The notes beneath the pieces are model-generated. The model did not search any database. It saw only the letters and a program-made list of their open reading frames with translations, and had not been told where the DNA came from. A program made the position numbers and the translations under genes. From contig OZ249446.1 of NCBI GenBank assembly GCA_965235115.1, positions 6,758,001-6,822,000 of the forward strand: 64,000 nucleotides of DNA, read 5' to 3'. This DNA comes from Laetmonice hystrix (Eukaryota). This document shows, in pieces, positions 3,381 through 39,027 of the stretch (positions are counted from its first letter, which is position 1; the number at the start of each line of letters is the position of its first letter).

Positions 3381-4628
3381 ATGGGCTGTAGCCACAGTAA
3401 ATTGAAAACAATAGCTAGTGAGACCACGATAGAAGTGGCTCCCTGGAAATTGATTTATACGTCGGTGCTTGAGGCATGGAGCAATGGGGACGCCGCCAGG
3501 TGGCACTTCGATGTATGTGCTGATTTATCAACTCGCAAGTCTCGCCTCCAGCCGTGGTGTACGCTCGGGCGAGATTTCGATGCCCTTCTTCCTGCGCCAC
3601 AAGAATCAGACGACCTGGATGTGAAATATGTGTATAATCAACTTCTTATTCGAGACAGTCATATGTGGAAAAACTACCGGGTGAAATTACCAAGGTCTTT
3701 TAAACACGACGTCAGAAATAAAATGAAGTCGTCACCATTTCTGGAGTCGGCCCAGGTTGTTGGTTATCGCGACCGGTTAGCCGTCGTTCAAGTGCCACGC
3801 ACTGATGGTCTGAACGAGTTTCTGATGGTTGACCTGATCAAAAACACCGTTTCCGGGGCATACAAAGAGGAATATCAAGATCAGCCCTGTTTGTATGAAT
3901 GTTACATAAGCCCTGACCTGAAACGGCTTCTTTTGAAGCCAAACTTGCTTTATGCCCTTAGATTCCGCGTCCAGGGCTTGGATGATTGTGTGAAGGTGTT
4001 GAGACGAGAAGACAACTATAATGACTGTTGTGTCACGTCAGTTCTCTTCAAGGACGCAGGTTTGGATCTAATTATGACGTTCGATCCCAGATACCGACAT
4101 AGCCGCGTTGCTATTGGCAACATGACCAAACGGGGGCAGCATGTATTGTGTTTGTATAATTTGAAAAGTCGAAAAATTGTCCGGAAAACCTACGGTCCAC
4201 AGTACCAAAGAGCTCAGAACCTCGTTTTCAGTCCGGATGGAGAACACCTAGCGGTGCTGATTGTGACGTACGTGGTCGGCCCCAACATGTACCCGCAGAG
4301 GTATAATTTTCTTGGGGTCATGGTCTACAACACCTCCAGTCTTACCATGCTCCATAAGATCCAGTGTTTCGGGACCTCTGCTGTGACCACCTTGACCCCT
4401 GCGGCCGTCTTTCCCCAGTTCTCCCGTCTTGGAGACTACCTGGCCCTGGGAAGCGGTTGTGGTGCCGACATCACACGCGTGGAAGTATATCGAATGCCCC
4501 GGGTCTTAAACCTGCAGAGCATCTGTCGCTACAAGATCAGTCAGTTCCTGTCCCAGGCCGAAGTAGACAACCTTCCTATCGATCCCAAGTTGAAAGATTA
4601 TCTTCTCTTTCGTCCAATCGAAGATTAA
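3381..4628 (+). CDS. Intronless 415-aa SOCS-box protein with divergent beta-propeller (WD40-like) repeats and N-terminal myristoylation/palmitoylation motif; probable Elongin-BC/Cullin-5 E3 ligase substrate adaptor
   Basis: Long clean ORF. N-terminus MGCSHSK fits MGxxxS with Cys3. Blade-like motifs CYISPDLKRLLL, MTFDPRY, LVFSPDGEHLAVL, FPQFSRLGDYLALG. C-terminal LNLQSICRYKI (BC box) and LPIDPKLKDYLLF (Cullin box). Confidence 0.85.
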   Translation: MGCSHSKLKTIASETTIEVAPWKLIYTSVLEAWSNGDAARWHFDVCADLSTRKSRLQPWCTLGRDFDALLPAPQESDDLDVKYVYNQLLIRDSHMWKNYRVKLPRSFKHDVRNKMKSSPFLESAQVVGYRDRLAVVQVPRTDGLNEFLMVDLIKNTVSGAYKEEYQDQPCLYECYISPDLKRLLLKPNLLYALRFRVQGLDDCVKVLRREDNYNDCCVTSVLFKDAGLDLIMTFDPRYRHSRVAIGNMTKRGQHVLCLYNLKSRKIVRKTYGPQYQRAQNLVFSPDGEHLAVLIVTYVVGPNMYPQRYNFLGVMVYNTSSLTMLHKIQCFGTSAVTTLTPAAVFPQFSRLGDYLALGSGCGADITRVEVYRMPRVLNLQSICRYKISQFLSQAEVDNLPIDPKLKDYLLFRPIED

Positions 4629-6160: not shown

Positions 6161-6526
6161 ACACACGGTCAAGAATGATGAGTATTACAGAACATCATCA
6201 GGTGCGATTTAGTGCATCCGTAAGGCGTCGGATTTTTGTGTGATAATGATACGATATCCATTAGTATGACAACCGATGTGGCTAATGATCATCATTATAA
6301 TTATACGGTGAATGCGAAATGTCTCCTGGTGAATTACAGTGAGCCATGGCTTACTATAGAAAGAAACAAAAGGCCTTCTCAGTGATTAGCGTCGGACGTG
6401 ATATCCCAGTCTACAGACAGCATTTAATTTAGTGCATTTCATCAGACGTTTGCACGTTGCCTGCAGGAGACAACAATTAGGTGAGCAATGGAATCCAGTA
6501 CACGGGAAAACATCTGAATGGAGGAT

Positions 6527-6575
6527 TGAGTGATGATGTTGGTGTTTAACGCCCAGTCAGCGGTATTTCAGCTAG
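6527..6575 (-). mobile_element. 3' end fragment of the SINE family also seen at 20262-20499
   Basis: Reverse complement reads gctgaaataccgctgactgggcgttaaacaccaac, nearly identical to the tail gctggaatactgctgactgggcgttaaacaccaac at about 20451-20485. Confidence 0.6.
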
Positions 6576-6706
6576 GCCTATATCAGGGCCAGAAGTCTGA
6601 ACCAACTCAGTCCGTGAAATCCATTGGGTGATGACGAGATGATGGGAAGATTGGCCTATGTAAATGACCGAAAGCGACTACACACGTGGGGGCGCCACCC
6701 GCTGTT

Positions 6707-6730
6707 GTCACGTCACGTCACGTCACGTCA
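6707..6730. repeat. (GTCAC)n microsatellite, about 5 units; each unit contains a CRE half-site (CGTCA/TGACG)
   Basis: gtcacgtcacgtcacgtcacgtca seen directly. Confidence 0.8.
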
Positions 6731-7359
6731 TCAAGCATACTCAGAGCTTTTCTTTCACTCATGCCGACAAAACTAACGTCAGATCAAACTGAGTCTCTCA
6801 TAAAGCCCCAGTCACACCGGGCCTGCGACCAGATTACGACCTAGCTGCGACCGAAAAATGTTGGAATCGCAGGCAAATCGCAGAAAGAGCGTGCGATTGG
6901 TCGCAGAGGTCGCGAGTGATCGCCAGAGCAAGAATTGTATAGATATTATGCACAGGTATAGCCTATCCCACAAACACTTTATGCGTGAAAGGTTTGTCAG
7001 ACAGTTGGTCAACCTAACTGTCCCCTTCTGTTACAACTTGGGGCAGTCCACTGACGTTGACACGCGCTGACATTAAAGTGGCACAGGCTGGGCTAGTCGT
7101 CAATATAAGGTCATCAAAAACACTTCGTTGCGGCCAAGGTGTAACCTTAGAAGTTCACAACATACCTTCATCACCATATTCATAATTGTCCAGTCAACGC
7201 CTGGCGTCAATATTCCTGGGTCTACAAATACAATATTCCCCGGCTTTTGTGGTAGACCGTTACCGCCGTCTCAATTCAGCACCTGCCCTAGACAACCACC
7301 ATCATTTCTTATTTTTTGAATTTTTTTTTTTTTTTGGTTTGGCATTTTTATTTTTTCAT

Positions 7360-7525
7360 TTCCGGGAAAAGGTGTAGGCACGTGCCTACAGTGCCTCATG
7401 GAAACTTGTGTGCATGTGAAAGCAGCTTTATGAGGAAGTGCTGGCAGCACGATCCTGACACCCCAGATGTCACGGTTGTTGCCGCGCAGTGACTTCCCTT
7501 TACCACGTAGTTTCAAAATGGCTAT
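7360..7525 (+). promoter_or_regulatory. Candidate promoter of the CARD-PDZ gene with a consensus STAT (GAS) site and a YY1-like motif
   Basis: TTCCGGGAA at 7360-7368 and CAAAATGGC near 7516-7524, about 0.7-0.8 kb upstream of the acceptor-preceded ATG at 8180. Confidence 0.3.
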
Positions 7526-8179
7526 CGGCCACTCTTGTCGTATACAAATGTATGAAGTCGTGACCGAGATTAACTGTGAGCTGAGGAAGAAACCGCCGCT
7601 GCACCGACATCCCGCTTGTTACTGAAGCAGGATTACATATTGAGATGCTTCATCGTCTAAACGGATCCTACGGCAAAGCTAAGTGCAGCCAATTTGGTCA
7701 GTTTGCTCCACATTAGGATCACGGTGTTTAAGAGCAGTCGGCCTTACAACAGGCAGCACCGGACCGTGGAGGGTTCGGTATATAGCGGAAAGAAGGTCAG
7801 TGGACATAATGGTTCATAACGACAGCAACTGCCATAGAAATGATATTCATATGAGCCATGAGCCAGTCTAAAGAAGAAGGTCAAGCCTAAGAGGAATATC
7901 TATAGCAATATTTTGAAACTGAAGTTTCTCTTAGCCGTAATGATACACCTCATTGGCTAGCAGGGGATGGGGTACTTTGATATGTGTTGATCGACCCTGC
8001 TCAGACTGATAAGAAACATGGTTGACATGTGTGGGGCGGCCCCACATTATGAGAGGCAATTTGTTCCTGCGCTTTTAATAACTTCTTAGTAGGGACTCGC
8101 AGATGGTGTATTTAAGCACCGTAAGTTATTGAATGTTACCGACTTATAATGACATTCCTCCGGACTTTTTCTCCTTCAG

Positions 8180-8340
8180 ATGAACTCATCACAATTAGTA
8201 GTTTTAGGAGAGTTTCGCACGCAATTACTGGCTCTCTCCTACCGTGACGTCATAGATTACTTGATCGCCGCCGGCTTGCTCAGTATCAACGAATTTGAAC
8301 GTATCCATGCTACAAATACTCCCCAGGATGCCATGGCAAC
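8180..8340 (+). CDS. CARD-PDZ protein, coding exon 1 (N-terminal part of CARD-like death fold)
   Basis: Acceptor ttctccttcAG directly before ATG 8180; MNSSQLVVLGEFRTQLLALSYRDVIDYLIAAGLLSINEFERIHATNTPQDAMA; donor AC|gtacgg at 8341 (phase 2). Confidence 0.75.
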
Positions 8341-8515
8341 GTACGGAATTAATATTCTCTCAGTTCAGTATAATAGTGCTTGTACGGGTTTAATTACGAG
8401 AGTATATCTATATATTTACAAATTCTCTTAGCATTCCCCAAGATGGGCTGAATGCCCTTGACGTTCTCTTCTCTCGTCTCCTTTTCTCGATAATGGTTGT
8501 TGTGTAAAACCACCT

Positions 8516-8682
8516 TAGTGGCGGATCCGGGGGAGGGTTTGAAGCCCCCCTTGGCAACCGATTTTTCTTTTTCCCCACTTTAATTGTGAATTGACCATGC
8601 TGAACCCCCTAAAGCAAATTCTTCCCCTAACACCCCCCCCCCCCCCCCCCCCCCCGTTACCAAAATACTGGATCCGTCCCTG
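8516..8682. mobile_element. Short poly-G/C MITE-like element (AGTGGCGGATCC...GGATCCGTCCCTG) in intron 1
   Basis: Imperfect terminal inverted repeats around GGATCC; same family as 11031-11318. Confidence 0.5.
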
Positions 8683-8806
8683 ATCTCATATCCTTTTCCC
8701 TGTCGGTTGTGTAAAACTACCTTAGCTAATCTCAGATTTTCTACTGGCTGATTTGTAAAACTATATCTCCTCCCGAGATCTATGCTGTGCATGCTGTGTG
8801 TCTCAG

Positions 8807-8925
8807 GTTGCTCGACCGTGTCTTGGCCAGCCCTGACGGCAGAGCCTTCGACTTATTTCTCAACGCGCTGGGGCAGTGCGAAGTGACTTGTGAGCTTGCC
8901 AATATGATACGCCGCCGATTCTCAG
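8807..8925 (+). CDS. CARD-PDZ protein, coding exon 2 (C-terminal part of CARD-like domain)
   Basis: Acceptor tgtctcAG|G at 8807, phase matches exon 1; LLDRVLASPDGRAFDLFLNALGQCEVTCELANMIRRRFS; donor G|gtgtgt at 8926 (phase 1). Confidence 0.75.
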
Positions 8926-8975
8926 GTGTGTGTATTTATGTTACCTTGACTAACCATGCAGTATGGGCTTTTTAA

Positions 8976-9255
8976 AGGACCAGTGTATTCGTGTCGAATA
9001 GGGTGGCGCCCCTGGATATCCGGCCCAAGTCGGTTTCATAACCTCCTGCACTCACCTTTAATACTCTGTTCATATCACCCTAAAAATATGATTTAGCTGT
9101 TTCAAATAATGCACGTAATATTAATTACTATACGGCCTATAGTTGTAGCTGCGCCTAGAATTCATTTTTCGGGAATTGATGTGGCGAACTATGTTCTGTG
9201 CGGATGTACACAACAACACGGGCCAACACGGCGTTCAAAGGAATACACTGGTCCT
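8976..9255. mobile_element. 280-bp MITE with 15-bp perfect TIR and TTAA target site duplication (Kolobok-like termini)
   Basis: TTAA|AGGACCAGTGTATTC ... GAATACACTGGTCCT|TTAA, in intron 2. Confidence 0.8.
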
Positions 9256-9415
9256 TTAAAATGGGCACTTAATATCGTCTGCTTTTAAAATTGTCAAAAA
9301 CATTCATTCCGCCGGATATAGGCCTACTGCGAAACTACCAGGGTATTATCAAAGGCTCGTCATTCCTTTTTTAATTTTAATTTAATTTAATTTTTAATTT
9401 AATTTTTAATTGCAG

Positions 9416-9738
9416 AGTTCACCGTCTATAAAGAATCTACACAGAGTCCAAAAATAACGGTGAAGTTTCTCGGGAATCCAGGGCCAATGATCGGATTGCG
9501 ACTCGGATGTGATGTCGCAAAGTCGGTTTGGTCCGCCCGAAGCGCCACCTATATCACAGGAATTGTACCAGACTCTCCAGCAGCCAAAGTCAACCGCATA
9601 CAAGTAGGGGATATCCTCGTAAGGATCAATGATAAAGACATAAGAGGTGTCTCGGTGAAGAATATAAAGCAATTACTTTCATCAGTCACAAGCTTGACAA
9701 TACGACGGCCTCAGATATATAGGAAAATGTATCTGTAG
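9416..9738 (+). CDS. CARD-PDZ protein, coding exon 3 (PDZ domain, stop)
   Basis: Polypyrimidine tract and ttgcAG|AG, phase matches exon 2; PMIGLRL (GLGF-loop equivalent), TYITGIVPDSPAAKVNRIQVGDILVRINDKDIRGVSVKNIKQLL. Joined CDS 161+119+323=603 nt, 200 aa. Confidence 0.85.
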
Positions 9739-10936
9739 GTCGTATTATCTACCAACGAAACCTAACGCAACTTTCGTGGCAGCTGATTTTACAGTAGACT
9801 ATTAAGCCATTAATAGTTTTTAATTCGACCGCATCGACAAGACTGAAACCTCTTTTGTATAATATTTCAGAATCCAGATATAAGTCGATAGTTAGTCGAG
9901 CTGCCGTAGGCCCACTCACAGAGGGCATAAACACATTTAGGAGGTCAGCCTACCTTGGGTTATGTCGCCTCCATGCGTGGTCTATACAAGCGTCTTAAAG
10001 GGTAGAGGCCTACAGCGGCAAGAAGGTCGGCCGACAGCTAGTGTACAAACCAAAAAAGAAAGAAACAAAAAAGACTATATTTATTATATAATACTCACAA
10101 CTCGGCATGCACCTTTAACGCTTATATTTTCAGAGGCCACGCAAACTGTGATATAATGTTGGTCTTTAAACAGAATCTTTCTGTGGCTTAGGCATATAGG
10201 TGTCACCATGCAAGAACCACTCTTTAAGATGCTTCGATGTTTTTGGGGGTTGGAATGGGATATCTCGGCAGTTATCCAATGAACAACCAGTGCAGTGTGG
10301 AACTCTATAGCACCTATATATAAGATTACAGATTTTGGTTAATTATATATGCTTCTATGGCCCCATTATTTTAAGTAGGCGTAGAGCAGGATGGTCTAAA
10401 GTATGTCTTCATACTTGATGCACTCCTCGTTCTGCCACGGATATGGAGCAAAACGGGGTAAAGTGACATTTAGGGCCTACGCCTATATTTATTTTATAGA
10501 TCTAGGCATATTAATGTTTTCTGTTTGCCAAAGTTAGATCTCTATGTGTTATTTCGGCCAATTTCCAATAAAGTTTCAATTAGGCCTTAAGGTTGTCAAT
10601 ATATAGGCTACAAAGCGTCTTCATTTGATGGCCAACTGGGTATTAACCATATGGTATTAACTATAGTGGCCTCCCATCCACTTCTATATCCAGGTCGACC
10701 GTAATAAGACCGGCCGGGAAAGTAGGCTTTGCCCCAAGTCCCCGGATGCCCCCCCCCCCCCCCCAATCAACCCGCAAATTGCTGGTGGCCTAAAAAGGTT
10801 CAGTCCTGGAAATTAGGCCTATGTAGGCCTATACCTCAATCTGGGGTCAAACACATCTGCACCCCCCCCCCCTTTGAAATAGACAGCGGCGTCCCTCATT
10901 GCCCTATCTTTGCAGCCTTGAGTTGGTAGGCCTATA

Positions 10937-11762: not shown

Positions 11763-12733
11763 GTATGGGCAAAAATATTTCAGAAATGGTGCTCACTTCC
11801 GCTTTAGCAGTGCCCCCTTTCGGCAATCATAAAACTAAACATGGACGTGAGTGATGATGGAATGGTCGGAGTCTGAGACTGATGGTGTGTATGTGTATTA
11901 TACTCTCCCGCACGAAAAGAATCATCTGGCATTGCGCCTACTGTAGTGTAGAGTGAGGTAAGACGGCGGATGATAACCTCATGTCGATCTCAGGTCGAAC
12001 TTATGCCTCAGCTCGACTTCAACGTGTCCGGGTGGGTGTCCGGGGCGGCGGCGGCGGCGGCGACGATGATCGTTATCTCGCAGTCGCCCGACTCTAGATG
12101 CACCATTATTCTATACAGTCTGGTTGCTCCCTTTTCCATTGTCAGATAAACCCAGCTGAAGGCTGGGCCAAACTCGCCGTATTTCTCCATGTTGCTGGCA
12201 AAGAATAATTTTATGATAGTGTCGTCCACTAGTAATGTGATGTGCCGTTATCTGATGGGATCACTGTGTGCATTCAGTGCAGTGGCTGCATGGCCATAGA
12301 TGGATTCAGAATCTTACAAGGCCTGGGGATTATTATTTGAACATATTGCTGTTATTCCAAAGTATTAGTGGCAGTACTGATTGCTTTAATGCATGCATTG
12401 ATTTATTGGGAAAATAAAGTTATTTCCAGAAAAATAATGACCACATCAGCAGGTAAGAGCTAGAGTACTTATTGCAGAATGTTTTAACATTATCATCATT
12501 GATCTAATGAGCTGATCTGATCTTATGGGCCTATTTTTAAAGAATACAAGTTGCATTATTATAATATAAAATAATTATAATTTTTTTTATATATACGGGT
12601 ACCCAGGGTTGCCAACATGTAGGCCTACGGTTTGCCTGTAATTAAGTTGAAAACAAAATTTATATTACTGCTAATCAAATGCACCTGTCTTTTTGACAGA
12701 TTTTTCAGAAGATACCCTGAGAGATTTTACAGC

Positions 12734-15080
12734 ATGGACCAGGCCTGTGGTGGAGCATCATTACTAGTCACTGACAGTGAAATGGCTGTGTCCCATCCTG
12801 TCCATGACACAGATAATGCAGAGACTCCGGCGGAGTCGGAGAATGGTGCCGACAGTGGGGGAGAAACATTGCCTGTCACCCACAGTGAAATGGCTGTGTC
12901 TGATCGAGTCAATGACACAGATACTCTACCAGAGTCCGATAATGTCACCCACAGTGAAATGGCTGTGTCTGATCCCGTCGAGGACACAGATACTCTGCCA
13001 GAGTCAGATAGTGTCACGCACAGTGAAATGGCTGTGTCTGATCCAGTCCAGGACACAGATACTCTGCCAGAGTCAGATAGTGTCACCCACAGTGAAATGG
13101 CTGTGTCTGATTCCGTCAAGGACACAGATACTCTGCCAGAGTCTGATAGTGTCACGCACAGTGAAATGGCTGTGTCTGATTCCATCAAGGACACAGATAC
13201 TCTACCAGAGTCAGATAGTGTCACGCACAGTGAAATGGCTGTGTCTGACCCCGTCAAGGACACAGATACTCTGCCAGAGTCTGATAGTGTCACGCACAGT
13301 GAAATGGCTGTGTCTGACCCCGTCAAGGACACAGATACTCTACCAGAGTCAGATAGTGTCACGCACAGTGAAATGGCTGTGTCTGACCCCATCAAGGACA
13401 CCTATACTCTGCCAGAGTCAGATAGTGTCACCCACAGTGAAATGGCTGTGTCTGACCCCGACAAGGACACAGATACTCTGCCAGAGTCAGATAGTGTCAC
13501 CCACAGTGAAATGGCTGTGTCTGACCCCATCAAAGACACCTATACTCTGCCAGAGTCAGATAGTGTCACGCACAGTGAAATGGCTGTGTCTGATCCCGTC
13601 GAGGACACCTATACTCTGCCAGAGTCAGATAGTGTCACGCACAGTGAAATGGCTGTGTCTGACCCCATCAAGGACACCTATACTCTGCCAGAGTCAGATA
13701 GTGTCACGCACAGTGAAATGGCTGTGTCTGATCCCGTCGAGGACACCTATACTCTGCCAGAGTCAGATAGTGTCACGCACAGTGAAATGGCTGTGTCTGA
13801 TCCCGTCGAGGACACCTATACTCTGCCAGAGTCAGATAGTGTCACGCACAGTGAAATGGCTGTGTCTGACCCCATCAAGGACACCTATACTCTGCCAGAG
13901 TCAGATAGTGTCACGCACAGTGAAATGGCTGTGTCTGACCCCATCAAGGACACCTATACTCTGCCAGAGTCAGATAGTGTCACGCACAGTGAAATGGCTG
14001 CATCTGATCCAGTCATTGACACAAACAGTACAGAGACTTGCCCAGAATCGGAGAGTGTCAGTGTCAGTGAGGGAACATCATTGCTAGTAAACCACAGTGG
14101 AATGCCTGTGTCCGAGGCAGAAGCAGACAGTGACAATGATGGTGAGGTGTGCACCACATGGATTCTTGAAGGAAATGACGACAACATGGTGTTGAAAGCG
14201 GCAAGCTCTCCCAGTATGCCCGAGAGGGCAGATCCATCAGTATTTAGTCAAAGCAACGTCGGCACTGCTTCAAAGGAAACCCCAAAGTGGGTCCCTGAGG
14301 AAGATAATCCGACTACTTTGTGGGTTGTTGAAGTAGCAAAAAGTAGTGGATGTGCAAGTGTGCTGGAAACCAATGAGAAGGTTCCCTGTGCCGGTAAAAT
14401 TGCGACTGACTCAAAGAACTCCACTGAAATGAAGCAAGGGTTCATGGACAGGGGACCAGTTTGTGTGGATTCAGGTGGTGCAATGATGTTGGAACCCGAA
14501 AAATCATCCCTGCTAGAGGCTTCTGAACACACAGACAAGAAAACAGAAAAAAACAATGTGAAAAACATGAACCAGCCAAAAAATATCAATATAGAAGAAG
14601 ATGAACCGCAGGTTATTACTTTAGCTGATGACACAGAGTCCCTAGATGGTTGTAATCTGCCTGTTGATGGAGGGAATATAACCAAACAATCCACTGCTGG
14701 GCAGCAACAGAAAGATGTCGGAGAGGATCTTAATAACAGATTACCTGAACATAGTGCCAGGAAAATCACGGAGGAACGTATGTGTGGGCCGTGGAAGTTT
14801 GTTGTGAGGACAGTGGAACCCACAAATAGAAACCTCAACCGACTCACAGACGAGTGGGCCTCAGCTGCCCAGGAAGTTATTGCTTTGGAATCAATCAATC
14901 AGATCTCTGAAGCTGTTGACTGCGACATTGAGAGTCTCAGCGATGATTTCTTTATGGAACCACATGAGACTATTGCTGTGGAGTTAAACAGCACAGTGCC
15001 AGCTTATCCTGGGGATGCTGCATCAGAATGCAACAGTAATCACTTTACAAAGAGCAAGGGTCCCCAGGATGAAGAGGACG
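12734..15080 (+). CDS. Multi-C2H2 zinc-finger protein, large acidic low-complexity exon containing a 23-aa tandem repeat
   Basis: Part of ORF 12632-15379. Acceptor ttttgacAG near 12700 and Kozak-like AGCATGG at 12734. Phase-1 donor G|gtgata at 15081 matches the next exon. Start and donor are inferred. Confidence 0.65.
12875..14010 (+). repeat. Coding minisatellite, 69-bp unit (VTHSEMAVSDPxxDT[D/Y]TLPESDS) x16 plus a partial 17th copy
   Basis: Units start at 12875 with exact 69-bp spacing (17th starts 13979); frame preserved throughout. Confidence 0.95.
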
Positions 15081-15975
15081 GTGATATCTGTGTGTTGGCC
15101 CAGCCCCCTAAAGTTTTCTACGAGTCTGACAGAGTGAGCATTCAGTCATCTGTTCTTTGTAGCTTATCTTATGGCAATCAAACAGATATTTATAGTACAA
15201 TAAGAGGACAGGGTTCTTTTCAAACCTTATTGGCCAGAATATTATCCAGAGCAGTGGCCCAGCAAAAAAATTTAAAACTTTGGTTTTCTGATTACTACCG
15301 GTACTTACATTTTCTGGAGAAAGGAGAGTTTGCATTTTTTGACTTACCAGATATGCAAAATATAAATGGGGAAAAGTGATACATAGTGTACATATATACC
15401 GTATATCAAACATTGAGGCAAAAGTCTTCCTGTCTTCAGATACTTGGATTACTGATGCCAGGTCAAGATTTCTTGGCTATCAGTAATCCCTAAAAATTTG
15501 AAGTCCAGATTGACAGTAAAACTAATGAGTTAAGCAAGGAAAAAGATAGTAAAAGTCCTTACAAATTTTGAAAATTTTTGACTAAATACTTAATTCCTGC
15601 CTCAAACTAAAGGAGCTTTTAACTTAAGTGAGTGAGTGAATTTATGTTAACCAGAAATACCGTAAGTATCGCTGTGTCTTTTGCAGAAGGCAGTCCCTGG
15701 AGACATCAGATTTATGCAACATGACGTTGAAGGTGGCAACTGCTGTAGCTCGGATGGTATGTTGATTATCATTTCCCATAGTCATCATTGTTGCTAGCAA
15801 TTTCTTGCATCCCCTGAGGGCTGTCAATCATGTCATTTTGAACCATAGATATTATATCCCATGTTCAAATATTTTTGCGTCTCTGTGTTCAAATATTTTT
15901 GCATCTCAACGTCTCTGGCCCTGTGTCATTGTTGATGGAAAAACTAGAAATTCTTGTTTTTACTAATTAATGCAG

Positions 15976-20499: not shown

Positions 20500-22561
20500 C
20501 TCCAGCAGGGCTTAACCGCTTAATTATTAATATAGAAAAAAGGAACGAAATAGCTAAAAAAAAAAAAAAAAAAAGTAGGCCCCTATACGAAGTACGTGTA
20601 AGTTTGAATAAAGATGATTTTATAAGAAAGGGAACAATTTACCCATCAGGTACGCCATCTATTAGTTGATAAACGTTTAGGTAGGGTAAGGTCCCTCTCA
20701 CGCCCATTGGCAGTGGCTTACTACACGTGTAAAAATAATATGAAGTTATCGCGGCTTCCAGTTAAATGCTTGATACAAAGTAGTGCTAAGAGGTTCTGGG
20801 TATGGACCTAATCCATTTATAATGTTTTTTTACATTAAGGACCGAAGCAAGTGTATCCATATTAACAGCGGAAGACTAATTTAAAGCTTGGACCACACTG
20901 ACCCTTAAGTAATACGACCTGCTTCCGTACCATACGTACCATGCAGGAGCTGAAATATGCCTGTTTAACTTTCAGCCCAAGGCTGAAGATAAAGGTAAGA
21001 GAGTCGTAACAACTCCGAGGATTTACAAAGGAAGCTGACGGTAGGTGTAGGTCTTACATAGTGGCTGCTGTTCTTAAATAGTGGCTGCTGTTTCAACATA
21101 CAGAAAAAAAATGAAATATCATAGCACATTTCATTATTATCATAGATCATATCTATGATTATATCAAACAATTATTTCTTTATGTGCACCCATAGATTCT
21201 AGCCGAGAACAACATGTAATCTTAACTGCTTAGTTATTAAACTATACATAGAACTGGAATTACGAGAACTCCGAATTAATAATGTATGTAACTTAAAAAG
21301 GTAAAAAGTTAGAAAAGGTGACAATAGCGTTAGGCGTTTGGTAAGCATACCAAAATAGTTTTGTATAATATTTGAAGGTAAAATTTTATAAATAGATTTC
21401 TGATGAAGAAGGCGGTAGTGAAGAAGCTAAAGCAAATCTGGCAAGACGAACAGTAGAAGGGCTTCAAGAGGTATATTTCAACCGGTCTCTCAATATTTGG
21501 AATAGAAGATGCGAAGTATGGGATGTTTCAGCTTAAGGTTGAGTACCGTGTAGAGTAAGATTTTCTAGGAAAAACAAATGTAAAAGAGCTGGAACAGCTC
21601 CACAAATTTAATCAGGCTGAAATCCTGACGACTACGAATAAGAACGGTGGTCACCCGGTTCACGTCTATCAGAAGATATCTGGAACCGTTTGTTCGTTAT
21701 AGCCTGATGTAAGCAACTGGAAGTACGTATCAATATTCTGACAAGGTAAGAATAGATAAGTCCATATCTAATCAATAACACCATTATAGTTACCTCATTT
21801 TGTTTCGATTTCATACTGAAAACGGCAGACAAAATCACGTCATATTGAAAGACTATAGTCTTTTTTTCCCAAATGTGTAGGCTACAATTTCACGCTGAGA
21901 AGAGTGAGTGAATATATTACGTTTTGCGCTGAGAAGATGATCGGGTGAGAACCAAAACATGGTTAACCTATCGATCTGATTTTCGTGTACATTCGCTAAT
22001 ACTACGAATTCAATCCTATAAACGTAGGATCTTAACTGCAGCGTTTTTGCTAGCAATCAGGGCCCGGTTTTTCGAAAATACTTAAGTCTGAATTTCACTC
22101 AACTCTACTCAACTCAGGAAATGGAGGATTTACAGTGGCTAAAAACGTTCTTTAAGTAGGCAGACTATCTATAGGAAGTATCCCCAATGCTGATGTTATT
22201 TGTAGGCAGCCGGAGATGGTTTGTCTCCGACGGCAGAACGAGGAGATTGAGGATAAGTGTTGAGTGTCTGGCATGCACCTATTGGTTCTAATTAGTGTCC
22301 TGCAGACATTGATATACCTGAACCTCTGAATTCTTACGCTAGAAATAGATGGTCAGTCTGATAGGCAAGGATAAATGTAGTGACTTAATCAATAAGTTGC
22401 CCAAAATAGCCTAAATATCTCAGCATAATGGAGATCACTCCGATGGAGTAAAGAAGATACGACCACTGCTAAGACGAATTAATCCAGGGCTAAATATATT
22501 AACGAGTATTGAGGACGCTCAGGTCTCTCATCTTGCAGCCCAAGGCTCCGGCATTGATATA

Positions 22562-22768
22562 AGGGTCCTTAGCCACTAAGCCGGCCGGTCAGCCGATTCC
22601 GAAAATGCATGGATGTAATTAGGCCCATTATAATGAGTGTAGATAAATAAGGTACCATTATGAGCACATATATATGTTTTCCGATTTTTGTTTACTATGA
22701 CCTATACAAACTCCTACAGAGTATCAAAAATGTGGCGTCGGCCGGTCAGCGGATTAGTGGATAGGGCC
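22562..22768. mobile_element. ~205-bp MITE at the left edge of the array
   Basis: Imperfect TIRs AGGGTCCTTAGCCACTAAGCCG ... CGGATTAGTGGATAGGGCCT. Confidence 0.5.
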
Positions 22769-25179
22769 TTAGATGGCATGCAAAATACATGAAAAGCTAA
22801 CTAGGACAATGAACGCCTATATGGCATCCAGTGGAATGCAGTCCCACAGTTCCACAAAGGTTGAAGGCACCCGTTGAAGGCAAGTATTAATTAAGCAATT
22901 ATTAATTAGGATGGTGTTCAGCCGAATCAAGTCTGTCAGACTTGGCACGGTGAGAAGCAGTCCCAAAGGGCACTGTAGAATAGGAGAAACAATTTAGATA
23001 ACGAGAAGGGTAAACGCCAGAGAAATTAGAACAGTAGAGATAGGAGAGTGCCCAACCATCGCGGGTCTAAAGCATTTCAGTCCCTCAGTTATCAGCCCAA
23101 GGCTGACGACATCAGTGTTGGTGACAGCAGATAGGAATTCTGAGAGTTGTAAAATACATAAAAAGCTAAGCAGAACAGTGAATGCCTATGGCGTTCAGTA
23201 GAAGATAGTGCAACAGTTCGTCAAGGTCAAAGGGTGCAGCAGACGATCATCAAGATAAATTCAGGGGAAGCACACAGTTATTTAGCAAGTCCCGAGGACT
23301 CAAATTTTGTAGTTAGTGTAGTGTTCAGGCAAATTAAGTCTGTAAGAAAAATGACATGGTAAGAAGCAGTCCCAAAGGGCACTGTACAGTAGAAGAAATC
23401 AGTTGGATAAGCAAAATGGTAAACGTCAGAAATATATGAAAATAAGAGATTGGCTCATGCCCAAATATCGCGAGTCTAAATGATTTAGTCCCTGCCGTTA
23501 TCAGCCCAAGGCTGAAGATATCAGTAGGGTTGACAGCATATAGAAATTTGACAACGCCTGAAGACATCCGTACAGGGTACAGCAGACTATCATCAAGATG
23601 AATTCAGGCTAACCAAGCAGTTCTTTGGCAAGTCCTGAGGACTCGCAAAGTATTAATTAAGATGGCATTTAGCCGACTCAAGTTTCTCAGGAAAATGGCA
23701 GGGTGATAAGCAGTCCCAAAGGGCACTGTAGATTAGAAGAAACAATTTTCATAAGGAGAACGCTATACGCCAGATATATTAGAACAGAAGAGATTATATA
23801 GTGCCCAACCATCGCTAGTCTAAAGGATTTAGTCCGTCAGCTATCAGCCCAAGGCTAAAGACATCAGTAGGGTTGACAGCATAGAGACATTCTGAGAAAT
23901 GGCATGTAAAATAGACGAAAAACTAACCAGGACAATGAACGCCTATGGCATCCAGTAGAATGCAGTCCCAACAGTTCCACAAAGGTTGAAGGCACCCGTA
24001 CAGGGTGCAGCAGACTGACATCAATATACTTTAAGGTTTAGTAGAAAATTATTTGGCAAGTCCTGAGGACTCAAAAAGTATTAATAAGAATGGTGTTCTG
24101 CCGAATCAAGTCTGTCAGACTTGGCACGGTGAGAAGCAGTCCCAAAGGGCACTGTAGATTAGAAAAAAACAATTTCGATAACGAGAACGGTAAACGCCAG
24201 ATATATTAGAACAGAAGAGATTGGATAGTACCCAACCATCGCGAGTCTAAAGCATTTTAGTCCTCAGTTATCAGCCCAAGGCTGACGACATCAGTGGTGC
24301 TGACAGCATATAGAATTATTCTAAGAGTTGAGGTGCAACGCCATGAAAAACTAACCAGGACAATGAATGCGTATGGCATCCAGTAGAATGCAGTCCCAGC
24401 AGTTCCACAAAGCCTGAAGACACCCGTACAGGGTGCAGCAGACTATCATCAAGAAAACTCAGGCTAAGCAAGCAGTTCTTTGGCAAGTCCTGGGGACTCG
24501 CAAAGTATTAATTAAGATGGCATTTAGCCGACTCAAGTTTCTCAGGAAAATGGCAGGCTGATATGCAGTCCCAAAGGGCACTGTAGATTAGAGGAAACAA
24601 TTTTGATGAGGAGAACGGTAAACGCCAGATATATTAGAACAGAAGAGATTGGATAGTACCCAACCATCGCGAGTCTAAAGCATTTTAGTCCTCCGTTATC
24701 AGCCAAAGGCTGAAGACATCAGTGGTGGTGACAGCATATAGAAATTCTAAGAGTTGAGGTGCAACGCCATGAAAAACTAACCAGGACAATGAATGCCTAT
24801 GGCATCCAGTAGAATGCAGTCCCAACAGTTCCGCAAAGGTTGAAGGCACCCATACAGGGTGCAGCAGACTAACATCAGTATACTTTAAGGTTTAGCAAAA
24901 AATTATTTGGCAAGTGCTGAAGACTTAAAAGTATTAATTAGGATGGTGTTCTGCCGAATCAAGTCTGTCAGACTAGGCACGGTGAGAAGCAGTCCCAAAG
25001 GGCACTGTAGAATAGAAGAAACAATTTTGATAACGAGAAACGTAAACGCCAGAGATATTAGAACAGTAGAGATAGGAGAGTGCCCAACCATCGCGGGTCT
25101 AAAGCATTTCAGTCCCTCAGTTATCAGCCAAAGGCTGAAGACATCAGTGGTGGTGTGAGCAGATAGGATTTCGGAGAGT

Positions 25180-28100
25180 TGGCATGTAAAAGATATAAAC
25201 AGTGAATGCCTATGGCGTTCAGTAGTCTAAGATGGTGCAACAGTTTGACAAGGTCGAAGGGTGCAGCAGACCATGATCAAGATAATTTCAGGGGAAGCAC
25301 ACAGTTCTTTAGCAAGTCCTGAGGACTCAAATTTCGTAATTAGGATGGTATTCAGCCAATTCACATCTGTAAGAATAATGGCATAGTCAGAAGCAGTCCC
25401 AAAGGGCACTGTAGAGTAAAAGAAATCATTATTTGATAAGGATAACGGTAAACGCCAGAAATATATGAAAAGAAGAGACCGGCTCCTGCCAAACCATCGC
25501 GAGTCTAAATGATTTAGTCCTTCCGTTATCAGCCCAAGGCTGAAGACATCAGTAGGGCTGGCAGCATATAAACATTCTAAGAGTTGAGGTGCAACCCCAT
25601 GAAAAACTAACCAGGACAATGAATGCCTATGGCATCCAGTAGAACGCAGTCCCAGCAGTTGCACAAAGGTTGAAGCCACCCGTACAGGGTGCAGCAGACT
25701 ATCATCAAGATGAATTCAGGCTAGGCAAGCAGTTCTTTGACAAGTCCTCAGGACTCGCAAAGTATTAATTAAGATGGCATTTAGCCGACTCAAGTTTCTC
25801 AGGAAAATGGCAGGCTGATATGCAGTCCCAAAGGGCACTGTAGATTAGAGGAAACAATTTTGATGAGGAGAACGGTAAACGGCAGATATATTAGAACAAA
25901 AGAGATTAGATAGTGCCCAACCATCGCGAGTCTAAAGCATTTTAGTAGTTATCAGCAAGGCTGAAGATATCATTAGTGTTGACAGTAGATAGGAAATCTG
26001 AAATTTAGCATGTAAAATACATAAAAAGCTAACTAGGACAGTGAATGCCTATGGCCTTCAGTAGAAGATAGTGTAACAGTTCGACAAGGTCGAATGGTAC
26101 AGCAGACGACCATCAAGATAAATTCAGGGGAAGCACACAGTTATTTAGCAAGTCCCGAGGACTCAAATTTTGTACTTAGGAGGGTGCTCTGCCAATTGCA
26201 CTCTGTAAGAAAAATGGCACAGCCAGAAGCAGTCCCAAAGGGCACTGTAGAGTAGAGGAAATCATTTGGATAAGGATAACGGTAAACGCCAGAATTATAT
26301 GAACAGAAGAGATTGGCTCATGCCCTACCATAATGGGTCTAAATGATTTAGTCCCTCCATTATCAGCCCAAGGCTGAAGACATCAGTAGGGCTGGCAGCA
26401 TATAGAAATTCTGAGAGTTGGAGTAGAATGCAGTTCCAGCAGTTCTACAAAGGTTGAAGGCACCTGTACAGGGTGCAGAAGACAATCATCAAGATAAATT
26501 GAGGCTAAGCAAGCAGTTCTTAGACAAGTCCTGAGGACTCGCAAAGTATTAATTAAGATGACATTTAGCCGACTCAAGTTTCTCAGGAAAATGGCAGGGT
26601 GATAAGCAGTCCCAAAGGGCACTGTAGATTAGAAGAAAAAATTTTCATAAGGAGAACGCTATACGTCAGATATATTAGAACAGAAGAGATTATATAGTGC
26701 CCAACCATCGCTAGTCTAAAGGATTTAGTCCGTCAGCTATCAGCCCAAGGCTGAAGACATCAGTAGGGTTGACAGCATAGAGACATTCTGAGAAATGGCA
26801 TGTAAAATAGACGAAAAACTAACCAGGACAATGAACGCCTATGGCATCCAGTAGAATGCAGTCCAAACAGTTCCACAAAGGTTGAAGGCACCCATACAGG
26901 GTGCAGCAGACTAACATCAGTATACTTTAAGGTTTAGCAGAAAATTATTTGGCAAGTCCTGAGGACTCAAAAAGTATTAATTAACATGGTGTTCAGCCGA
27001 ATCAAGTCTGACAGACTTGGCATAATGAGAAGCAGTCCCAAAGGGCACTGTAGATTAGAAGAAACAATTTCAATAACGAGAAGGTAAATGCCAGAGATAT
27101 TAAAAGAGAAGAGATTGGATAGTGTCCAACGATCACGGGTCTAAAGCATTTTAGACCCTCAGTTATCAGCCAAAGTCTGAAGACATCAGTGGTGGTGTGA
27201 GCAGATAGGAATTCGGAGAGTTGGCATGTAAAAGACATAAAAAGCTAACCAAAACAGTGGATGCCTATGGCGTTCAGTAGTCTAAGATGGTGCAACAGTT
27301 CGACAAGATCGAAGGGTGCAGCAGACCATGATCAAGATAATTTCAGGGGAAGCACACAGTTCTTTCGCAAGTCCCGAGGACTCAAATTTCGTAATTAGGA
27401 TGGTGTTCAGCCAATTCACATCTGTAAGAATAATGGCATAGTCAGAAGCAGTCCCAAAGGGCACTGTAGAGTAAAAGAAATCATTATTTGATAAGGATAA
27501 CGGTAAACGCCAGAAATATATGAAAAGAAGAGACCGGCTCCTGCCAAACCATCGCGAGTCTAAACGATTTAGTCCCTCCGTTATCAGCCCAAGGCTGAAG
27601 ACATCAGTAGGGCTGGCAGCATATAAACATTCTAAGAGTTGAGGTGCAACCCCATGAAAAACTAACCAGGACAATGAATGCCTATGGCATCCAGTAGAAC
27701 GCAGTCCCAGCAGTTGCACAAAGGTTGAAGCCACCCGTACAGGGTGCAGCAGACTATCATCAAGATGAATTCAGGCTAGGCAAGCAGTTCTTTGACAAGT
27801 CCTCAGGACTCGCAAAGTATTAATTAAGATAGCATTTAGCTGACTCAAGTTTCTCAGGAAAATGGCAGGCTGATATGCAGTCCCAAAGGGCACTGTAGAT
27901 TAGAGGAAACAATTTTGATGAGGAGAATGGTAAACGGCAGATATATTAGAACAAAAGAGATTAGATAGTGCCCAACCATCGCGAGTCTAAAGCATTTTAG
28001 TAGTTATCAGCAAGGCTGAAGATATCATTAGTGTTGACAGCAGATAGGAATTCTGAAATTTGGCATGTAAAATACATAAAAAGCTAACTAGGACAGTGAA

Positions 28101-38443: not shown

Positions 38444-39027
38444 CATCCTCCCCCGCTCGGGCTTGAACTGCTGCAGTATAGCAGTTGATTCATCCCCTTC
38501 CCACCTGCCCGTCTATTCTTTGAAACGCGTTCCTCGCAGCTCCACCTGTTCTGCCGTCTGCGGCCGCGCCATGAGATTACACACTGCCTGAGGCCTGATT
38601 CATAAAAATTAGCGTGCATTTCTGGTTAGCCAATGGGAACGTTCCCACGGTAAAGTTGTTGTTGTCGAAGCGAAGCGTTGTCGAAGCGAAGCCAACGATA
38701 GCAGCAACGGGTAGGCATTTAATCCCGACACTATAGTGACAGTGAGAGGAACAACTTTGAGTTGACAGGGCTGCAAGAACACACACTATAACTAACTGTA
38801 TTGTTACGGAGCGACACATTTGTTTATCAGCCACCTGGGCAAGGCTATCAGGCATTTTTGCGAGAAGTAAGCCTTCAGTGTGGACGGCTTGTGCAGGTGG
38901 AGCGCCGATGACAGGTCCTATTGATATTCATAAGGTTGACCTCAGGGTCAACTTCCGCCCGGTTAGCATGGGCTGCGCTCAAGGGGTAGAATGCAGGATG
39001 CGCGATGCCCCTTGACAACTCAAGATA
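38444..39027. mobile_element. 584-bp unclassified insertion inside the array with a 9-bp TSD
   Basis: TTATCAGCC at 38435-38443 and 39028-39036; the monomer resumes in register after the insert; no clear TIR or poly-A. Confidence 0.75.

What the first reader, a model, noticed from the sequence alone, without database searches (positions are those of the whole stretch)
8180..9738. Minimal two-domain CARD-PDZ adaptor hidden across three exons
Seen: three exons with canonical splice sites and matching phases (2, 1) give a 200-aa ORF, with a CARD-like helical N-terminus (RDVIDYLIAAGLLSINEFERI...LLDRV...AFDLFLNAL) joined directly to one PDZ. Established: CARD plus PDZ is known in large MAGUK scaffolds (CARMA/CARD10/11/14, DLG5) that also carry coiled-coil, SH3 and GUK. 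Inference: a stand-alone CARD-PDZ could bridge receptor C-termini directly to caspase/CARD signalling, or act as a dominant-negative decoy. Val replaces the usual His at the start of PDZ helix B, hinting at non-class-I ligands.
Basis: partly seen in the sequence, partly recalled or inferred. Interest (0 to 1): 0.72.

Follow-up and report, generated by a model that had tools for sequence, protein, structure and literature searches.

The report
Small expressed CARD-PDZ adaptor gene
This is a real, transcribed invertebrate gene for a complete 200-residue protein made only of a CARD (cell-death/immune signalling clasp) and one PDZ (tail-binding) domain; it has one sister gene in the same genome, I found no description of this two-domain design, and its function is still inferred.

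Summary
Exons 8180-8340, 8807-8925 and 9416-9738 (+) have GT..AG borders and intron phases 2 and 1, and give a 200-aa ORF. Pfam finds CARD and PDZ above their curated cut-offs.

**Transcript evidence**
- A spliced contig in one run joins a non-coding 5' exon (7507-7795) to 8180-8340 and then to 8807-8925.
- The contig leaves the genome exactly at 8925. The acceptor at 9416 is inferred, not seen.
- An in-frame TAA in the 5' exon makes M1 the start.
- The stop is followed by contiguous 3' UTR to at least 10488. The protein is therefore not part of a larger MAGUK.

**Domains**
- An AlphaFold model built with a CARD alignment superposes on the Apaf-1 CARD (TM 0.87-0.89).
- The nearest CARD by sequence is the first CARD of Trichoplax CRADD, not a CARMA CARD.
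- The PDZ keeps its carboxylate loop (MIGL) and has Val174 where class I PDZs have His.

**New here**
- A paralogue on contig C18 has the same exon structure and reads CARD, degenerate PDZ, PDZ.
- Both proteins end in a hydrophobic-x-hydrophobic tail.

No orthologue or described CARD-PDZ-only protein was found. The adaptor function is inference. This genome is rich in CARD fusions. I rate it a new variant of a known kind, of moderate interest.

The parts
7507..7795 (+). Non-coding 5' exon (minimum extent). It carries an in-frame TAA at 7658-7660 and three upstream ORFs. Its donor is AAG|GTCAGT.
   Evidence: X4 contig 26 joins it to 8180.
7518..7625 (+). Upstream ORF of 35 codons with a good start context (caaaATGG), wholly inside the leader.
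8180..8340 (+). Coding exon 1 (aa 1-53 plus 2 nt). The ATG follows the acceptor AG directly. It encodes CARD helices H1a/H1b, H2, H3 and the start of H4.
   Evidence: The piece alone is recognised as CARD by the Atlas.
8807..8925 (+). Coding exon 2 (aa 54-93 plus 1 nt). It encodes CARD helices H4-H6.
   Evidence: (junction 8340/8807 seen; contig leaves the genome at 8925)
9416..9738 (+). Coding exon 3 (aa 94-200 plus TAG): linker, PDZ and C-terminal tail. The acceptor ttgcAG|AG is inferred.
9451..9708 (+). PDZ domain, aa 106-191.
   Evidence: Pfam PDZ and PDZ_6 above cut-off. PDB phmmer gives DLG4 PDZ at E 6.5e-6.
9487..9498 (+). Carboxylate-binding loop M118-I-G-L121, the equivalent of GLGF (x-hydrophobic-G-hydrophobic).
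9655..9657 (+). Val174 at the first position of PDZ helix B, where the consensus has His.
9709..9735 (+). C-terminal tail PQIYRKMYL. It ends in Met-Tyr-Leu, which has the form of a class II PDZ ligand.
   Evidence: The paralogue ends ...ICFCV at the same distance from its PDZ.
9739..10488 (+). 3' UTR (minimum extent). An AATAAA lies at 10567.
   Evidence: X4 contig 30 covers 9602-10488 without a break. Searches give the sequence.

Best explanation
**Shown.** A four-exon, transcribed, single-copy gene encodes a complete 200-aa protein with three parts:
- an acidic N-terminal CARD (aa 1-95, pI 4.75) of the Apaf-1/CRADD/caspase-2/9 type;
- a linker of about 10 residues;
- one basic PDZ (pI 10.3) with an intact carboxylate-binding loop, a hydrophobic residue (Val174) at helix-B position 1, and a 9-residue tail ending Met-Tyr-Leu.

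The gene belongs to a two-member family in its genome. The paralogue on contig C18 has the same exon plan and reads CARD, degenerate PDZ, PDZ.

**Inferred.** The protein works as a bipartite adaptor, in the way CRADD (CARD plus death domain) or ASC (pyrin plus CARD) do. The PDZ would dock on the hydrophobic C-terminal tail (class II type) of a membrane or cortical protein. The CARD would recruit a CARD-bearing partner, most likely a basic caspase-prodomain-type CARD, by homotypic binding. Cell-death or innate-immune signalling would thereby be tied to a particular site in the cell. The adaptor reading alone I put at roughly 0.45. The reality of the gene and its architecture I put at about 0.9.
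For: - **Gene model and frame:**
- **Transcript:** the spliced contig shows the 5' exon and the 8340/8807 junction. It departs from the genome exactly at 8925, and contiguous 3' UTR follows the stop.
- **Start codon:** an in-frame stop lies upstream of M1 with no intervening ATG.
- **Domains:** CARD and PDZ are both above Pfam cut-offs.
- **CARD model:** pLDDT is 92-97 over aa 1-100, with a kinked helix 1 and six helices.
- **CARD fold matches:** Foldseek finds the Apaf-1 CARD at TM 0.87-0.89 and rmsd 1.2-1.4 A over 90 residues, and all top 50 PDB hits are CARDs.
- **Nearest CARD relatives:** AFDB neighbours are Trichoplax death-domain proteins, caspase-9, Apaf-1 and caspase-2. The closest CARD by sequence is Trichoplax CRADD CARD1, at 29.6 bits over aa 7-94.
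- **PDZ:** it is nearest to the InaD, MPDZ, PTPN13 and DLG PDZs. Conserved G120, G158 and D159 are present.
- **Paralogue:** the CARD-coding part is 280 nt in both genes, the intron phases are the same, CARD identity is 43%, and the PDZ exons are reciprocal best matches. This argues that the design is kept by selection.
- **Charge split:** CARD pI 4.75 against PDZ pI 10.3.
Against: - No binding partner, localisation or phenotype is known.
- The acceptor at 9416 and the first 186 nt of the PDZ exon are not covered by any laid RNA contig.
- Transcript evidence is a single low-depth contig from one sample.
- No orthologue was found in 1.84 billion representative proteins, in the word-index searches or in metagenomes. 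Conservation beyond this genome is therefore unshown.
- The PDZ itself was not modelled with confidence, because the alignment used carried no PDZ rows.
- The CARD model was built from an alignment of CARDs, so its fold is partly presupposed.
Confidence: 0.6

Rival explanations
1. **Decoy or inhibitor.** Like the CARD-only proteins (ICEBERG, CARD16-18), the CARD would cap or sequester a partner CARD and block signalling. The PDZ would only place it at a site, or would compete with other PDZ proteins for a tail, as the single-PDZ protein TIP-1 does.
For: The protein is very small and has no effector or oligomerising domain besides the CARD. The long leader with three upstream ORFs suggests tightly limited translation. 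The comparison with CARD-only proteins and TIP-1 comes from my general knowledge.
Against: Nothing distinguishes a decoy from an adaptor at sequence level. Known CARD-only decoys are recent copies of their target's CARD. This CARD has no close relative among the sampled CARDs of its own genome except its paralogue; the best other match is 19.7 bits.
Confidence: 0.2
2. **Self-assembling module.** The class II-type PDZ would bind the protein's own hydrophobic C-terminal tail, or the paralogue's. Binding in trans would give head-to-tail chains or dimers that concentrate CARDs and nucleate CARD filaments. Alternatively the tail would keep the PDZ closed until a better ligand displaces it.
For: Both paralogues end in hydrophobic-x-hydrophobic (MYL and FCV), exactly 11 residues after the last PDZ strand. 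Both have a hydrophobic residue (Val or Trp) at helix-B position 1 instead of His.
Against: A hydrophobic-x-hydrophobic end is common by chance, by my estimate roughly one protein in eight. The two tails share ancestry, so they are not independent. The two-copy complex prediction of PDZ plus tail gave no answer, with a score of 0.00, which counts neither way.
Confidence: 0.12
3. **By-product of domain shuffling.** The gene would be transcribed at a low level but have no selected function, in a genome that shuffles CARDs freely.
For: The genome has at least 55 CARD exons. Earlier notes of this scan report many CARD fusions, unchecked here. No orthologue was found. The transcript contig is of low depth.
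Against: Two paralogues, at only 29-43% identity, both keep intact ORFs, canonical splice sites, the same intron phases, and both domains above Pfam cut-offs. A neutral by-product is not expected to do that.
Confidence: 0.06
4. **Mis-modelled fragment.** The three exons would belong to a longer gene, such as a MAGUK-like scaffold, through isoforms that the available contigs do not show.
For: The ATG sits directly after a splice acceptor, so an upstream exon had to exist, and it does.
Against: That exon has an in-frame stop and no in-frame ATG. The TAG is followed by contiguous transcript. Pfam finds no domain other than CARD and PDZ in the 200-aa protein. The upstream gene is a separate single-exon SOCS-box ORF with its own stop. 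The paralogue has the same compact plan.
Confidence: 0.02

Closest known systems
CRADD/RAIDD (CARD plus death domain adaptor)
   Same: It is a small two-domain adaptor with an N-terminal CARD. The first CARD of Trichoplax 'CRADD' is the closest sequence relative of this CARD and groups with the two CARD-PDZ CARDs in the tree at 86/88 support. The RAIDD CARD is the best CARD hit in the PDB by sequence.
   Different: The second domain here is a PDZ, not a death domain. The upstream input would therefore be a C-terminal peptide rather than a death-domain complex such as the PIDDosome.
Apaf-1 CARD and the caspase-9 / caspase-2 prodomain CARDs
   Same: These give the best structural match: TM 0.87-0.89, rmsd 1.2-1.4 A and 26-27% identity. 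Like Apaf-1's CARD (from my general knowledge), this CARD is acidic, with pI 4.75.
   Different: There is no NB-ARC/WD40 region and no protease domain.
CARMA proteins (CARD10/11/14) and DLG5
   Same: These are the only well-known proteins that hold both a CARD and a PDZ in one chain.
   Different: They are large and also carry coiled coil, SH3 and guanylate-kinase domains, with four PDZs in DLG5. None of these is present here. The CARMA1 CARD is a distant match, at rank 43 and 13% identity. CARMA arose in jawed vertebrates by fusion of a CARD-CC protein with a ZO-1/Dlg5-like MAGUK (PMC5978004), so the fusion here is independent.
Invertebrate Death-like / TRADD-N proteins with variable C-termini that include PDZ (Kaur et al. 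2021, PMC8195603)
   Same: A death-fold domain and a PDZ are joined in lineage-specific invertebrate proteins.
   Different: Those proteins have a TRADD-N domain between the two. Here only about 10 residues separate CARD and PDZ, and Pfam finds nothing else.
CARD-only proteins (ICEBERG, CARD16-18) and single-PDZ proteins (TIP-1/TAX1BP3)
   Same: They are similar in size, and each could serve as a model for a decoy action of one half of this protein (from my general knowledge).
   Different: Each of those proteins has one domain only. This protein joins the two.
Paralogue in the same genome, G000:C18:1022585-1024299 (-), 284 aa
   Same: - The ATG directly follows an acceptor.
- The CARD-coding part is 280 nt.
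- The intron phases are 2 and 1.
- CARD identity is 43%.
- The PDZ exons are reciprocal best matches.
- Helix-B position 1 is hydrophobic.
- The C-terminus is hydrophobic-x-hydrophobic.
   Different: It has an extra, degenerate PDZ-like segment of about 90 aa between the CARD and the PDZ (hhalign probability 93.5). No transcript evidence for it was obtainable.

Membership tests
CARD (Pfam PF00619, death-fold superfamily) | The sequence matches the family profile above the curated cut-off. | tested here: met
   33.4 bits against 23.9, aa 20-77. It aligns over its full length with 25 other CARDs.
CARD (Pfam PF00619, death-fold superfamily) | A six-helix antiparallel bundle with helix 1 broken into H1a and H1b. 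| tested here: met
   The AlphaFold model has pLDDT 92-97, with helices at 3-11/13-17, 21-30, 36-43, 48-61, 67-76 and 82-101. It matches the Apaf-1 CARD at TM 0.87-0.89. This is a prediction, built from an alignment of CARDs.
CARD (Pfam PF00619, death-fold superfamily) | Homotypic CARD-CARD binding. | not testable with these tools
   No partner is known, and no such prediction was run.
PDZ (Pfam PF00595) | The sequence matches the family profile above the curated cut-off. | tested here: met
   PDZ 37.4 bits against 23.2 and PDZ_6 37.6 bits against 27. DLG4 PDZ matches at E 6.5e-6 in the PDB.
PDZ (Pfam PF00595) | A carboxylate-binding loop of the form x-hydrophobic-Gly-hydrophobic, with the conserved Gly and Asp of the core. 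| tested here: met
   M118-I-G-L121 aligns with GLGF. G120 and D159 are nearly invariant columns, and exon-3 G64 and D65 (= G158 and D159) are nearly invariant in A4.
PDZ (Pfam PF00595) | The PDZ fold: six strands and two helices. | tested here: inconclusive
   Both models have low confidence over the PDZ, with pLDDT 32-65, because no PDZ alignment could be combined with the CARD rows.
Class I PDZ | A His at helix-B position 1 that reads Ser/Thr at ligand position -2. | tested here: not met
   Val174 sits at that column, and the paralogue has Trp254. This fits class II-like, hydrophobic -2 ligands. That link between residue and ligand class comes from my general knowledge of PDZ domains.
CARMA / CARD-CC MAGUK (CARD10/11/14) | A coiled coil after the CARD, and an SH3 plus guanylate-kinase module after the PDZ. 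| tested here: not met
   The protein is 200 aa. About 10 residues lie between CARD and PDZ and 9 after the PDZ. Pfam finds no other domain.
CARMA / CARD-CC MAGUK (CARD10/11/14) | A CARD of the CARD9/CARD11 type. | tested here: not met
   The CARMA1 CARD ranks 43rd at 13% identity and the CARD9 CARD ranks 35th. Apaf-1 CARDs fill the top ranks.
DLG5 | CARD, coiled coil, four PDZ domains, SH3 and GUK. | tested here: not met
   There is one PDZ and no SH3 or GUK.
CRADD/RAIDD | A C-terminal death domain. | tested here: not met
   There is no Death-domain hit, and a PDZ occupies that place. Only the CARD resembles CRADD's.
Death-like / TRADD-N / PDZ proteins (PMC8195603) | A TRADD-N domain between the death-fold domain and the variable C-terminus. 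| tested here: not met
   Pfam at E up to 10 gives no such hit, and the space between the domains is only about 10 residues.

The most novel reading that the evidence does not exclude
The two CARD-PDZ proteins would form a self-contained trigger. A class II-type PDZ would bind the hydrophobic C-terminal tail of its own kind or of a membrane receptor. Tail exchange would switch the protein between a closed or chained state and a receptor-bound state that nucleates CARD filaments. This would be a route from a receptor tail straight to caspase recruitment, without an NLR, a death-domain complex or a MAGUK scaffold.
Probability: 0.1. Interest if true: 0.72.

Novelty: new variant of a known kind. 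Interest (0 to 1): 0.46.

Why it matters
CARD signalling is normally fed by large sensors or scaffolds such as NLRs, Apaf-1, PIDD-CRADD and CARMA. A 200-residue protein that couples a CARD directly to a peptide-tail reader would be the shortest conceivable wire from a membrane protein's C-terminus to caspase or CARD signalling. It would also be a second, independent invention of the CARD-plus-PDZ pairing seen in vertebrate CARMA proteins. It adds a concrete, expressed example to the picture of death-fold domain shuffling in lophotrochozoans. Because it is small and has two domains with standard assays, it is easy to test by peptide array, pull-down and filament nucleation. The limits are that function is only inferred, conservation outside this genome is unshown, and the genome appears to carry many other CARD fusions, which lowers the surprise.

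Tried and rejected
- **Word-index protein searches.** The whole protein gave only a bacterial PDZ protein, and the CARD region gave nothing at E up to 10. These searches see only proteins of 110-350 aa.
- **Exhaustive HMMER search of 1.84 billion representatives.** It returned 281 hits. The 150 shown are multi-PDZ proteins plus a few CARD proteins, and none has both domains. Weak orthologues with E between 6e-6 and 1e-3 are not listed, so they cannot be excluded.
- **P0109.** It seemed to span both domains, but it is a three-PDZ protein.
- **ESM Atlas with exon pieces.** The pieces were recognised as PDZ and CARD clusters, and no cluster carried both.
- **Metagenome scan with the CARD-exon alignment.** No relative was found.
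- **Single-sequence AlphaFold model.** Confidence was poor, and Foldseek gave only meaningless hits.
- **Combined CARD plus PDZ alignment (A1).** It misplaced the CARD rows onto the PDZ, so I did not use it for folding.
- **PDB sequence search with exon 1 alone.** No hits.
- **Complex prediction, two copies of PDZ plus tail.** No verdict, with a score of 0.00. This is not evidence either way.
- **Literature searches.** Searches for CARD-PDZ wording found nothing. Mentions of PDZ in a mussel immunome paper and an amphioxus paper were irrelevant.
- **Heterozygous sites.** I considered using the sites from the DNA runs as a sign of constraint. None of the listed variants lies in the CDS. However, 11 variants are not shown, and the whole 9232-10665 stretch is invariant, so I do not count this.
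Full report
**What is in the sequence.** The window is eukaryotic DNA from a 627-Mb assembly of 35 contigs and lies at C12:6758001-6822000. The three stretches 8180-8340, 8807-8925 and 9416-9738 on the + strand are bounded by cag|ATG, AAC|gtacgg, tcag|G, CAG|gtgtgt, gcag|AG and a TAG. Joined, they give 603 nt and a 200-aa ORF.

**Domains.**
- Pfam scores the N-terminus as CARD at 33.4 bits against a cut-off of 23.9.
- Pfam scores the C-terminus as PDZ at 37.4 bits against 23.2, and as PDZ_6 at 37.6 bits against 27.
- PDB sequence search finds DLG4, InaD and PATJ PDZs at E down to 6.5e-6. More weakly, it finds the RAIDD and Apaf-1 CARDs at E 0.015-0.04.

**Is it a real, complete gene?** Four public runs of one sample hold the stretch.
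- Three runs behave as genomic DNA. The fourth, X4, yields spliced contigs.
- X4 contig 26 (576 nt) lies on 7507-7795, 8180-8340 and 8807-8925 with GT..AG skips. It stops matching the genome exactly at 8925, leaving 7 letters unplaced.
- X4 contig 30 runs without a break from 9602 to 10488.
- The assembly holds no intron-less copy of the gene, so these contigs come from RNA.
- The junction 8340/8807 and the use of the donor at 8925 are therefore seen.
- The acceptor at 9416 is inferred. The depth in bin 9431-9627 is fully accounted for by contig 30, so 9416-9601 has no laid RNA contig.
- The inference is strong. The PDZ frame opens only at 9403, and the AG at 9414-9415 is the only phase-compatible acceptor, sitting behind a T-rich tract. 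The paralogue described below has an intron of the same phase at the same point.
- The newly found 5' exon does not extend the protein. In the frame of M1 it carries TAA at 7658-7660, 46 codons upstream, with no ATG after it.
- That exon holds three short upstream ORFs, one of 35 codons in a good start context.
- The upstream neighbour is a separate single-exon SOCS-box gene at 3381-4628.
The protein is complete at 200 aa.

**The CARD.**
- A single-sequence AlphaFold model was too poor to use.
- The genome encodes at least 55 CARD exons. I aligned 19 of them, plus CARDs from the protein search, to the full protein (A3).
- With that alignment the model has pLDDT 92-97 over residues 1-100. It shows a kinked first helix (3-11 and 13-17) and five more helices.
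- Foldseek places it on the Apaf-1 CARD at TM 0.87-0.89 normalised to the target, rmsd 1.2-1.4 A over 90 residues and 26-27% identity. All 50 best PDB matches are CARDs or designs based on one.
- The CARMA1 CARD ranks 43rd at 13% identity.
- AFDB cluster neighbours are Trichoplax death-domain proteins, mussel CARD proteins, caspase-9, Apaf-1 and caspase-2.
- By sequence, the nearest CARD outside the genome is the first CARD of Trichoplax 'CRADD' (CARD-CARD-Death). It scores 29.6 bits over aa 7-94.
- The CARD half is acidic at pI 4.75 and the PDZ half is basic at pI 10.3.
- Caveat: the model was built from a CARD alignment, so the fold result is not independent of the Pfam result.

**The PDZ.**
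- Aligned with 100 PDZ domains from the search hits (A4), it keeps the nearly invariant Gly and Asp positions.
- Its carboxylate-binding loop reads M118-I-G-L121 where the consensus reads GLGF.
- From general knowledge of PDZ classes, a hydrophobic residue there goes with ligands that have a hydrophobic residue at position -2 (class II).
- The nearest PDZs belong to InaD, MPDZ-like and PTPN13-like proteins.
- The PDZ fold itself was not modelled with confidence.

- The only other match to the protein in the genome lies on contig C18.
- Reading that locus (L004) shows the same gene plan on the minus strand. An ATGAAC start directly follows an acceptor. The first intron has a GTACGG donor in phase 2 at the same place in the CARD. 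The second intron is in phase 1.
- The CARD-coding part is exactly 280 nt in both genes: 164+116 against 161+119.
- The spliced ORF is 284 aa.
- Its CARD is 43% identical to ours over aa 23-90, far closer than any other CARD sampled; the next best is 19.7 bits.
- The two PDZ exons are reciprocal best matches in the genome.
- Pfam scores its first exon alone as CARD at 24.7 bits and its last exon as PDZ at 44.3 bits.
- The roughly 90 residues in between are a degenerate PDZ (hhalign probability 93.5 against A4).
- In a tree of 25 CARDs, the two CARD-PDZ CARDs group with Trichoplax CRADD CARD1 at 86/88 support. None of the other own-genome CARDs falls inside that group. The domain is short and branches are long, so this carries moderate weight.
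- Both paralogues have a hydrophobic helix-B position 1 (Val174 and Trp254).
- Both end, 11 residues after the last PDZ strand, in hydrophobic-x-hydrophobic: MYL and FCV.
- Two intact genes at 29-43% identity with the same architecture argue that the design is maintained by selection.

**How it most likely works.**
- Shown: a small protein with one CARD and one peptide-binding PDZ and nothing else.
- Inferred: it acts as a bipartite adaptor on the model of CRADD or ASC. The PDZ would dock on a hydrophobic C-terminal tail. The acidic CARD would recruit a complementary, probably basic, CARD such as a caspase prodomain.
- I give the adaptor reading about 0.45, a decoy or inhibitor role about 0.2, and a self-ligand or self-assembly mechanism through its own tail about 0.1.
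- The one complex prediction, two copies of PDZ plus tail, returned no verdict.

**Comparison with what is known.**
- CARD and PDZ occur together in CARMA proteins and DLG5, but this protein fails their defining features. It has no coiled coil, no SH3 or GUK domain, and its CARD is of another type.
- CARMA is a jawed-vertebrate fusion (PMC5978004), so this gene is an independent fusion.
- Invertebrate proteins that join death-fold domains to variable C-termini including PDZ have been described. Those carry a TRADD-N domain in between (PMC8195603), which is absent here.
- Full-text searches for CARD-PDZ wording found nothing.
- No protein with both domains appeared among the listed database hits. 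The top-150 limit leaves room for distant orthologues.

**Context that tempers the surprise.** Earlier notes of this scan, unchecked by me, report a tandem-CARD BTB-Kelch family of about 25 copies, a CARD-Bcl-2 gene and a CARD-NLR in the same genome. One of them calls the animal a probable annelid. My own look found at least 55 CARD exons, including a dispersed set of near-identical copies. The nearest Atlas cluster to the neighbouring SOCS-box gene is mostly molluscan. I can therefore only say that the animal is probably a lophotrochozoan.

**Verdict.** Function remains inference. It is a new variant of a known kind, a small bipartite CARD adaptor, made more credible by a paralogue and less startling by the CARD-shuffling habit of this genome.

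Noticed in passing
G000:C18:1022585-1024299 (-), in L004 at 3185-3022, 2754-2639 and 2045-1471: A paralogous gene of 284 aa reads CARD, degenerate PDZ, PDZ. It has the same intron phases and the same 280-nt CARD-coding block, and it ends ...ICFCV.
   Followed up: yes
window 7518-7625, 7552-7563, 7645-7716: The 5' leader exon of the CARD-PDZ transcript holds three upstream ORFs of 35, 3 and 23 codons. The first has a good start context. This suggests translational restraint of the main ORF.
   Followed up: partly
window 9412-9417: There is a tandem acceptor, gcAGAG. Use of the second AG would shift the frame, so only the first fits the ORF.
   Followed up: partly
window 3381-4628 (+): A single-exon ORF of 415 aa starts MGCSHS, which looks like a myristoylation signal, and ends in a SOCS box (Pfam 25.7 bits). 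Its nearest Atlas clusters are SOCS-box and WD40-SOCS proteins, mostly molluscan.
   Followed up: partly
window 12632-15379 (+): A long open frame of 915 aa holds about 20 tandem copies of a roughly 23-aa acidic unit (VTHSEMAVSDPVKDTDTLPESDS). It has no Pfam hit, and the opposite strand is also open across the repeats.
   Followed up: no
window 22000-42000: There is a sustained strong GC skew (about +0.11) and AT skew (about +0.2). This coincides with the 18-kb satellite noted by another first-stage finding (s1-311046).
   Followed up: no
window 6476-7263, 8546-8576, 8972-9260: Very high-copy repeats lie upstream of the gene and inside its introns, with summed contig depth of thousands to tens of thousands in the DNA runs. 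A poly-C run of about 28 C sits at about 8635-8662 in intron 2.
   Followed up: no
L019, L020, L022-L025, L027-L030, L033 (contigs C2, C3, C5, C8, C11, C12 of G000): Near-identical CARD exons (starting VNMEAKKFFTSHKTQLLAKL...) are dispersed over many chromosomes. About 20 weaker CARD hits cluster on C19:16.9-22.4 Mb. These may be the tandem-CARD BTB-Kelch family reported in earlier notes of the scan.
   Followed up: no
G000, whole genome: Nearly all other CARDs of this genome are encoded in one open frame. The two CARD-PDZ genes share a phase-2 intron inside helix 4 of the CARD, which is a useful marker for finding orthologues.
   Followed up: partly
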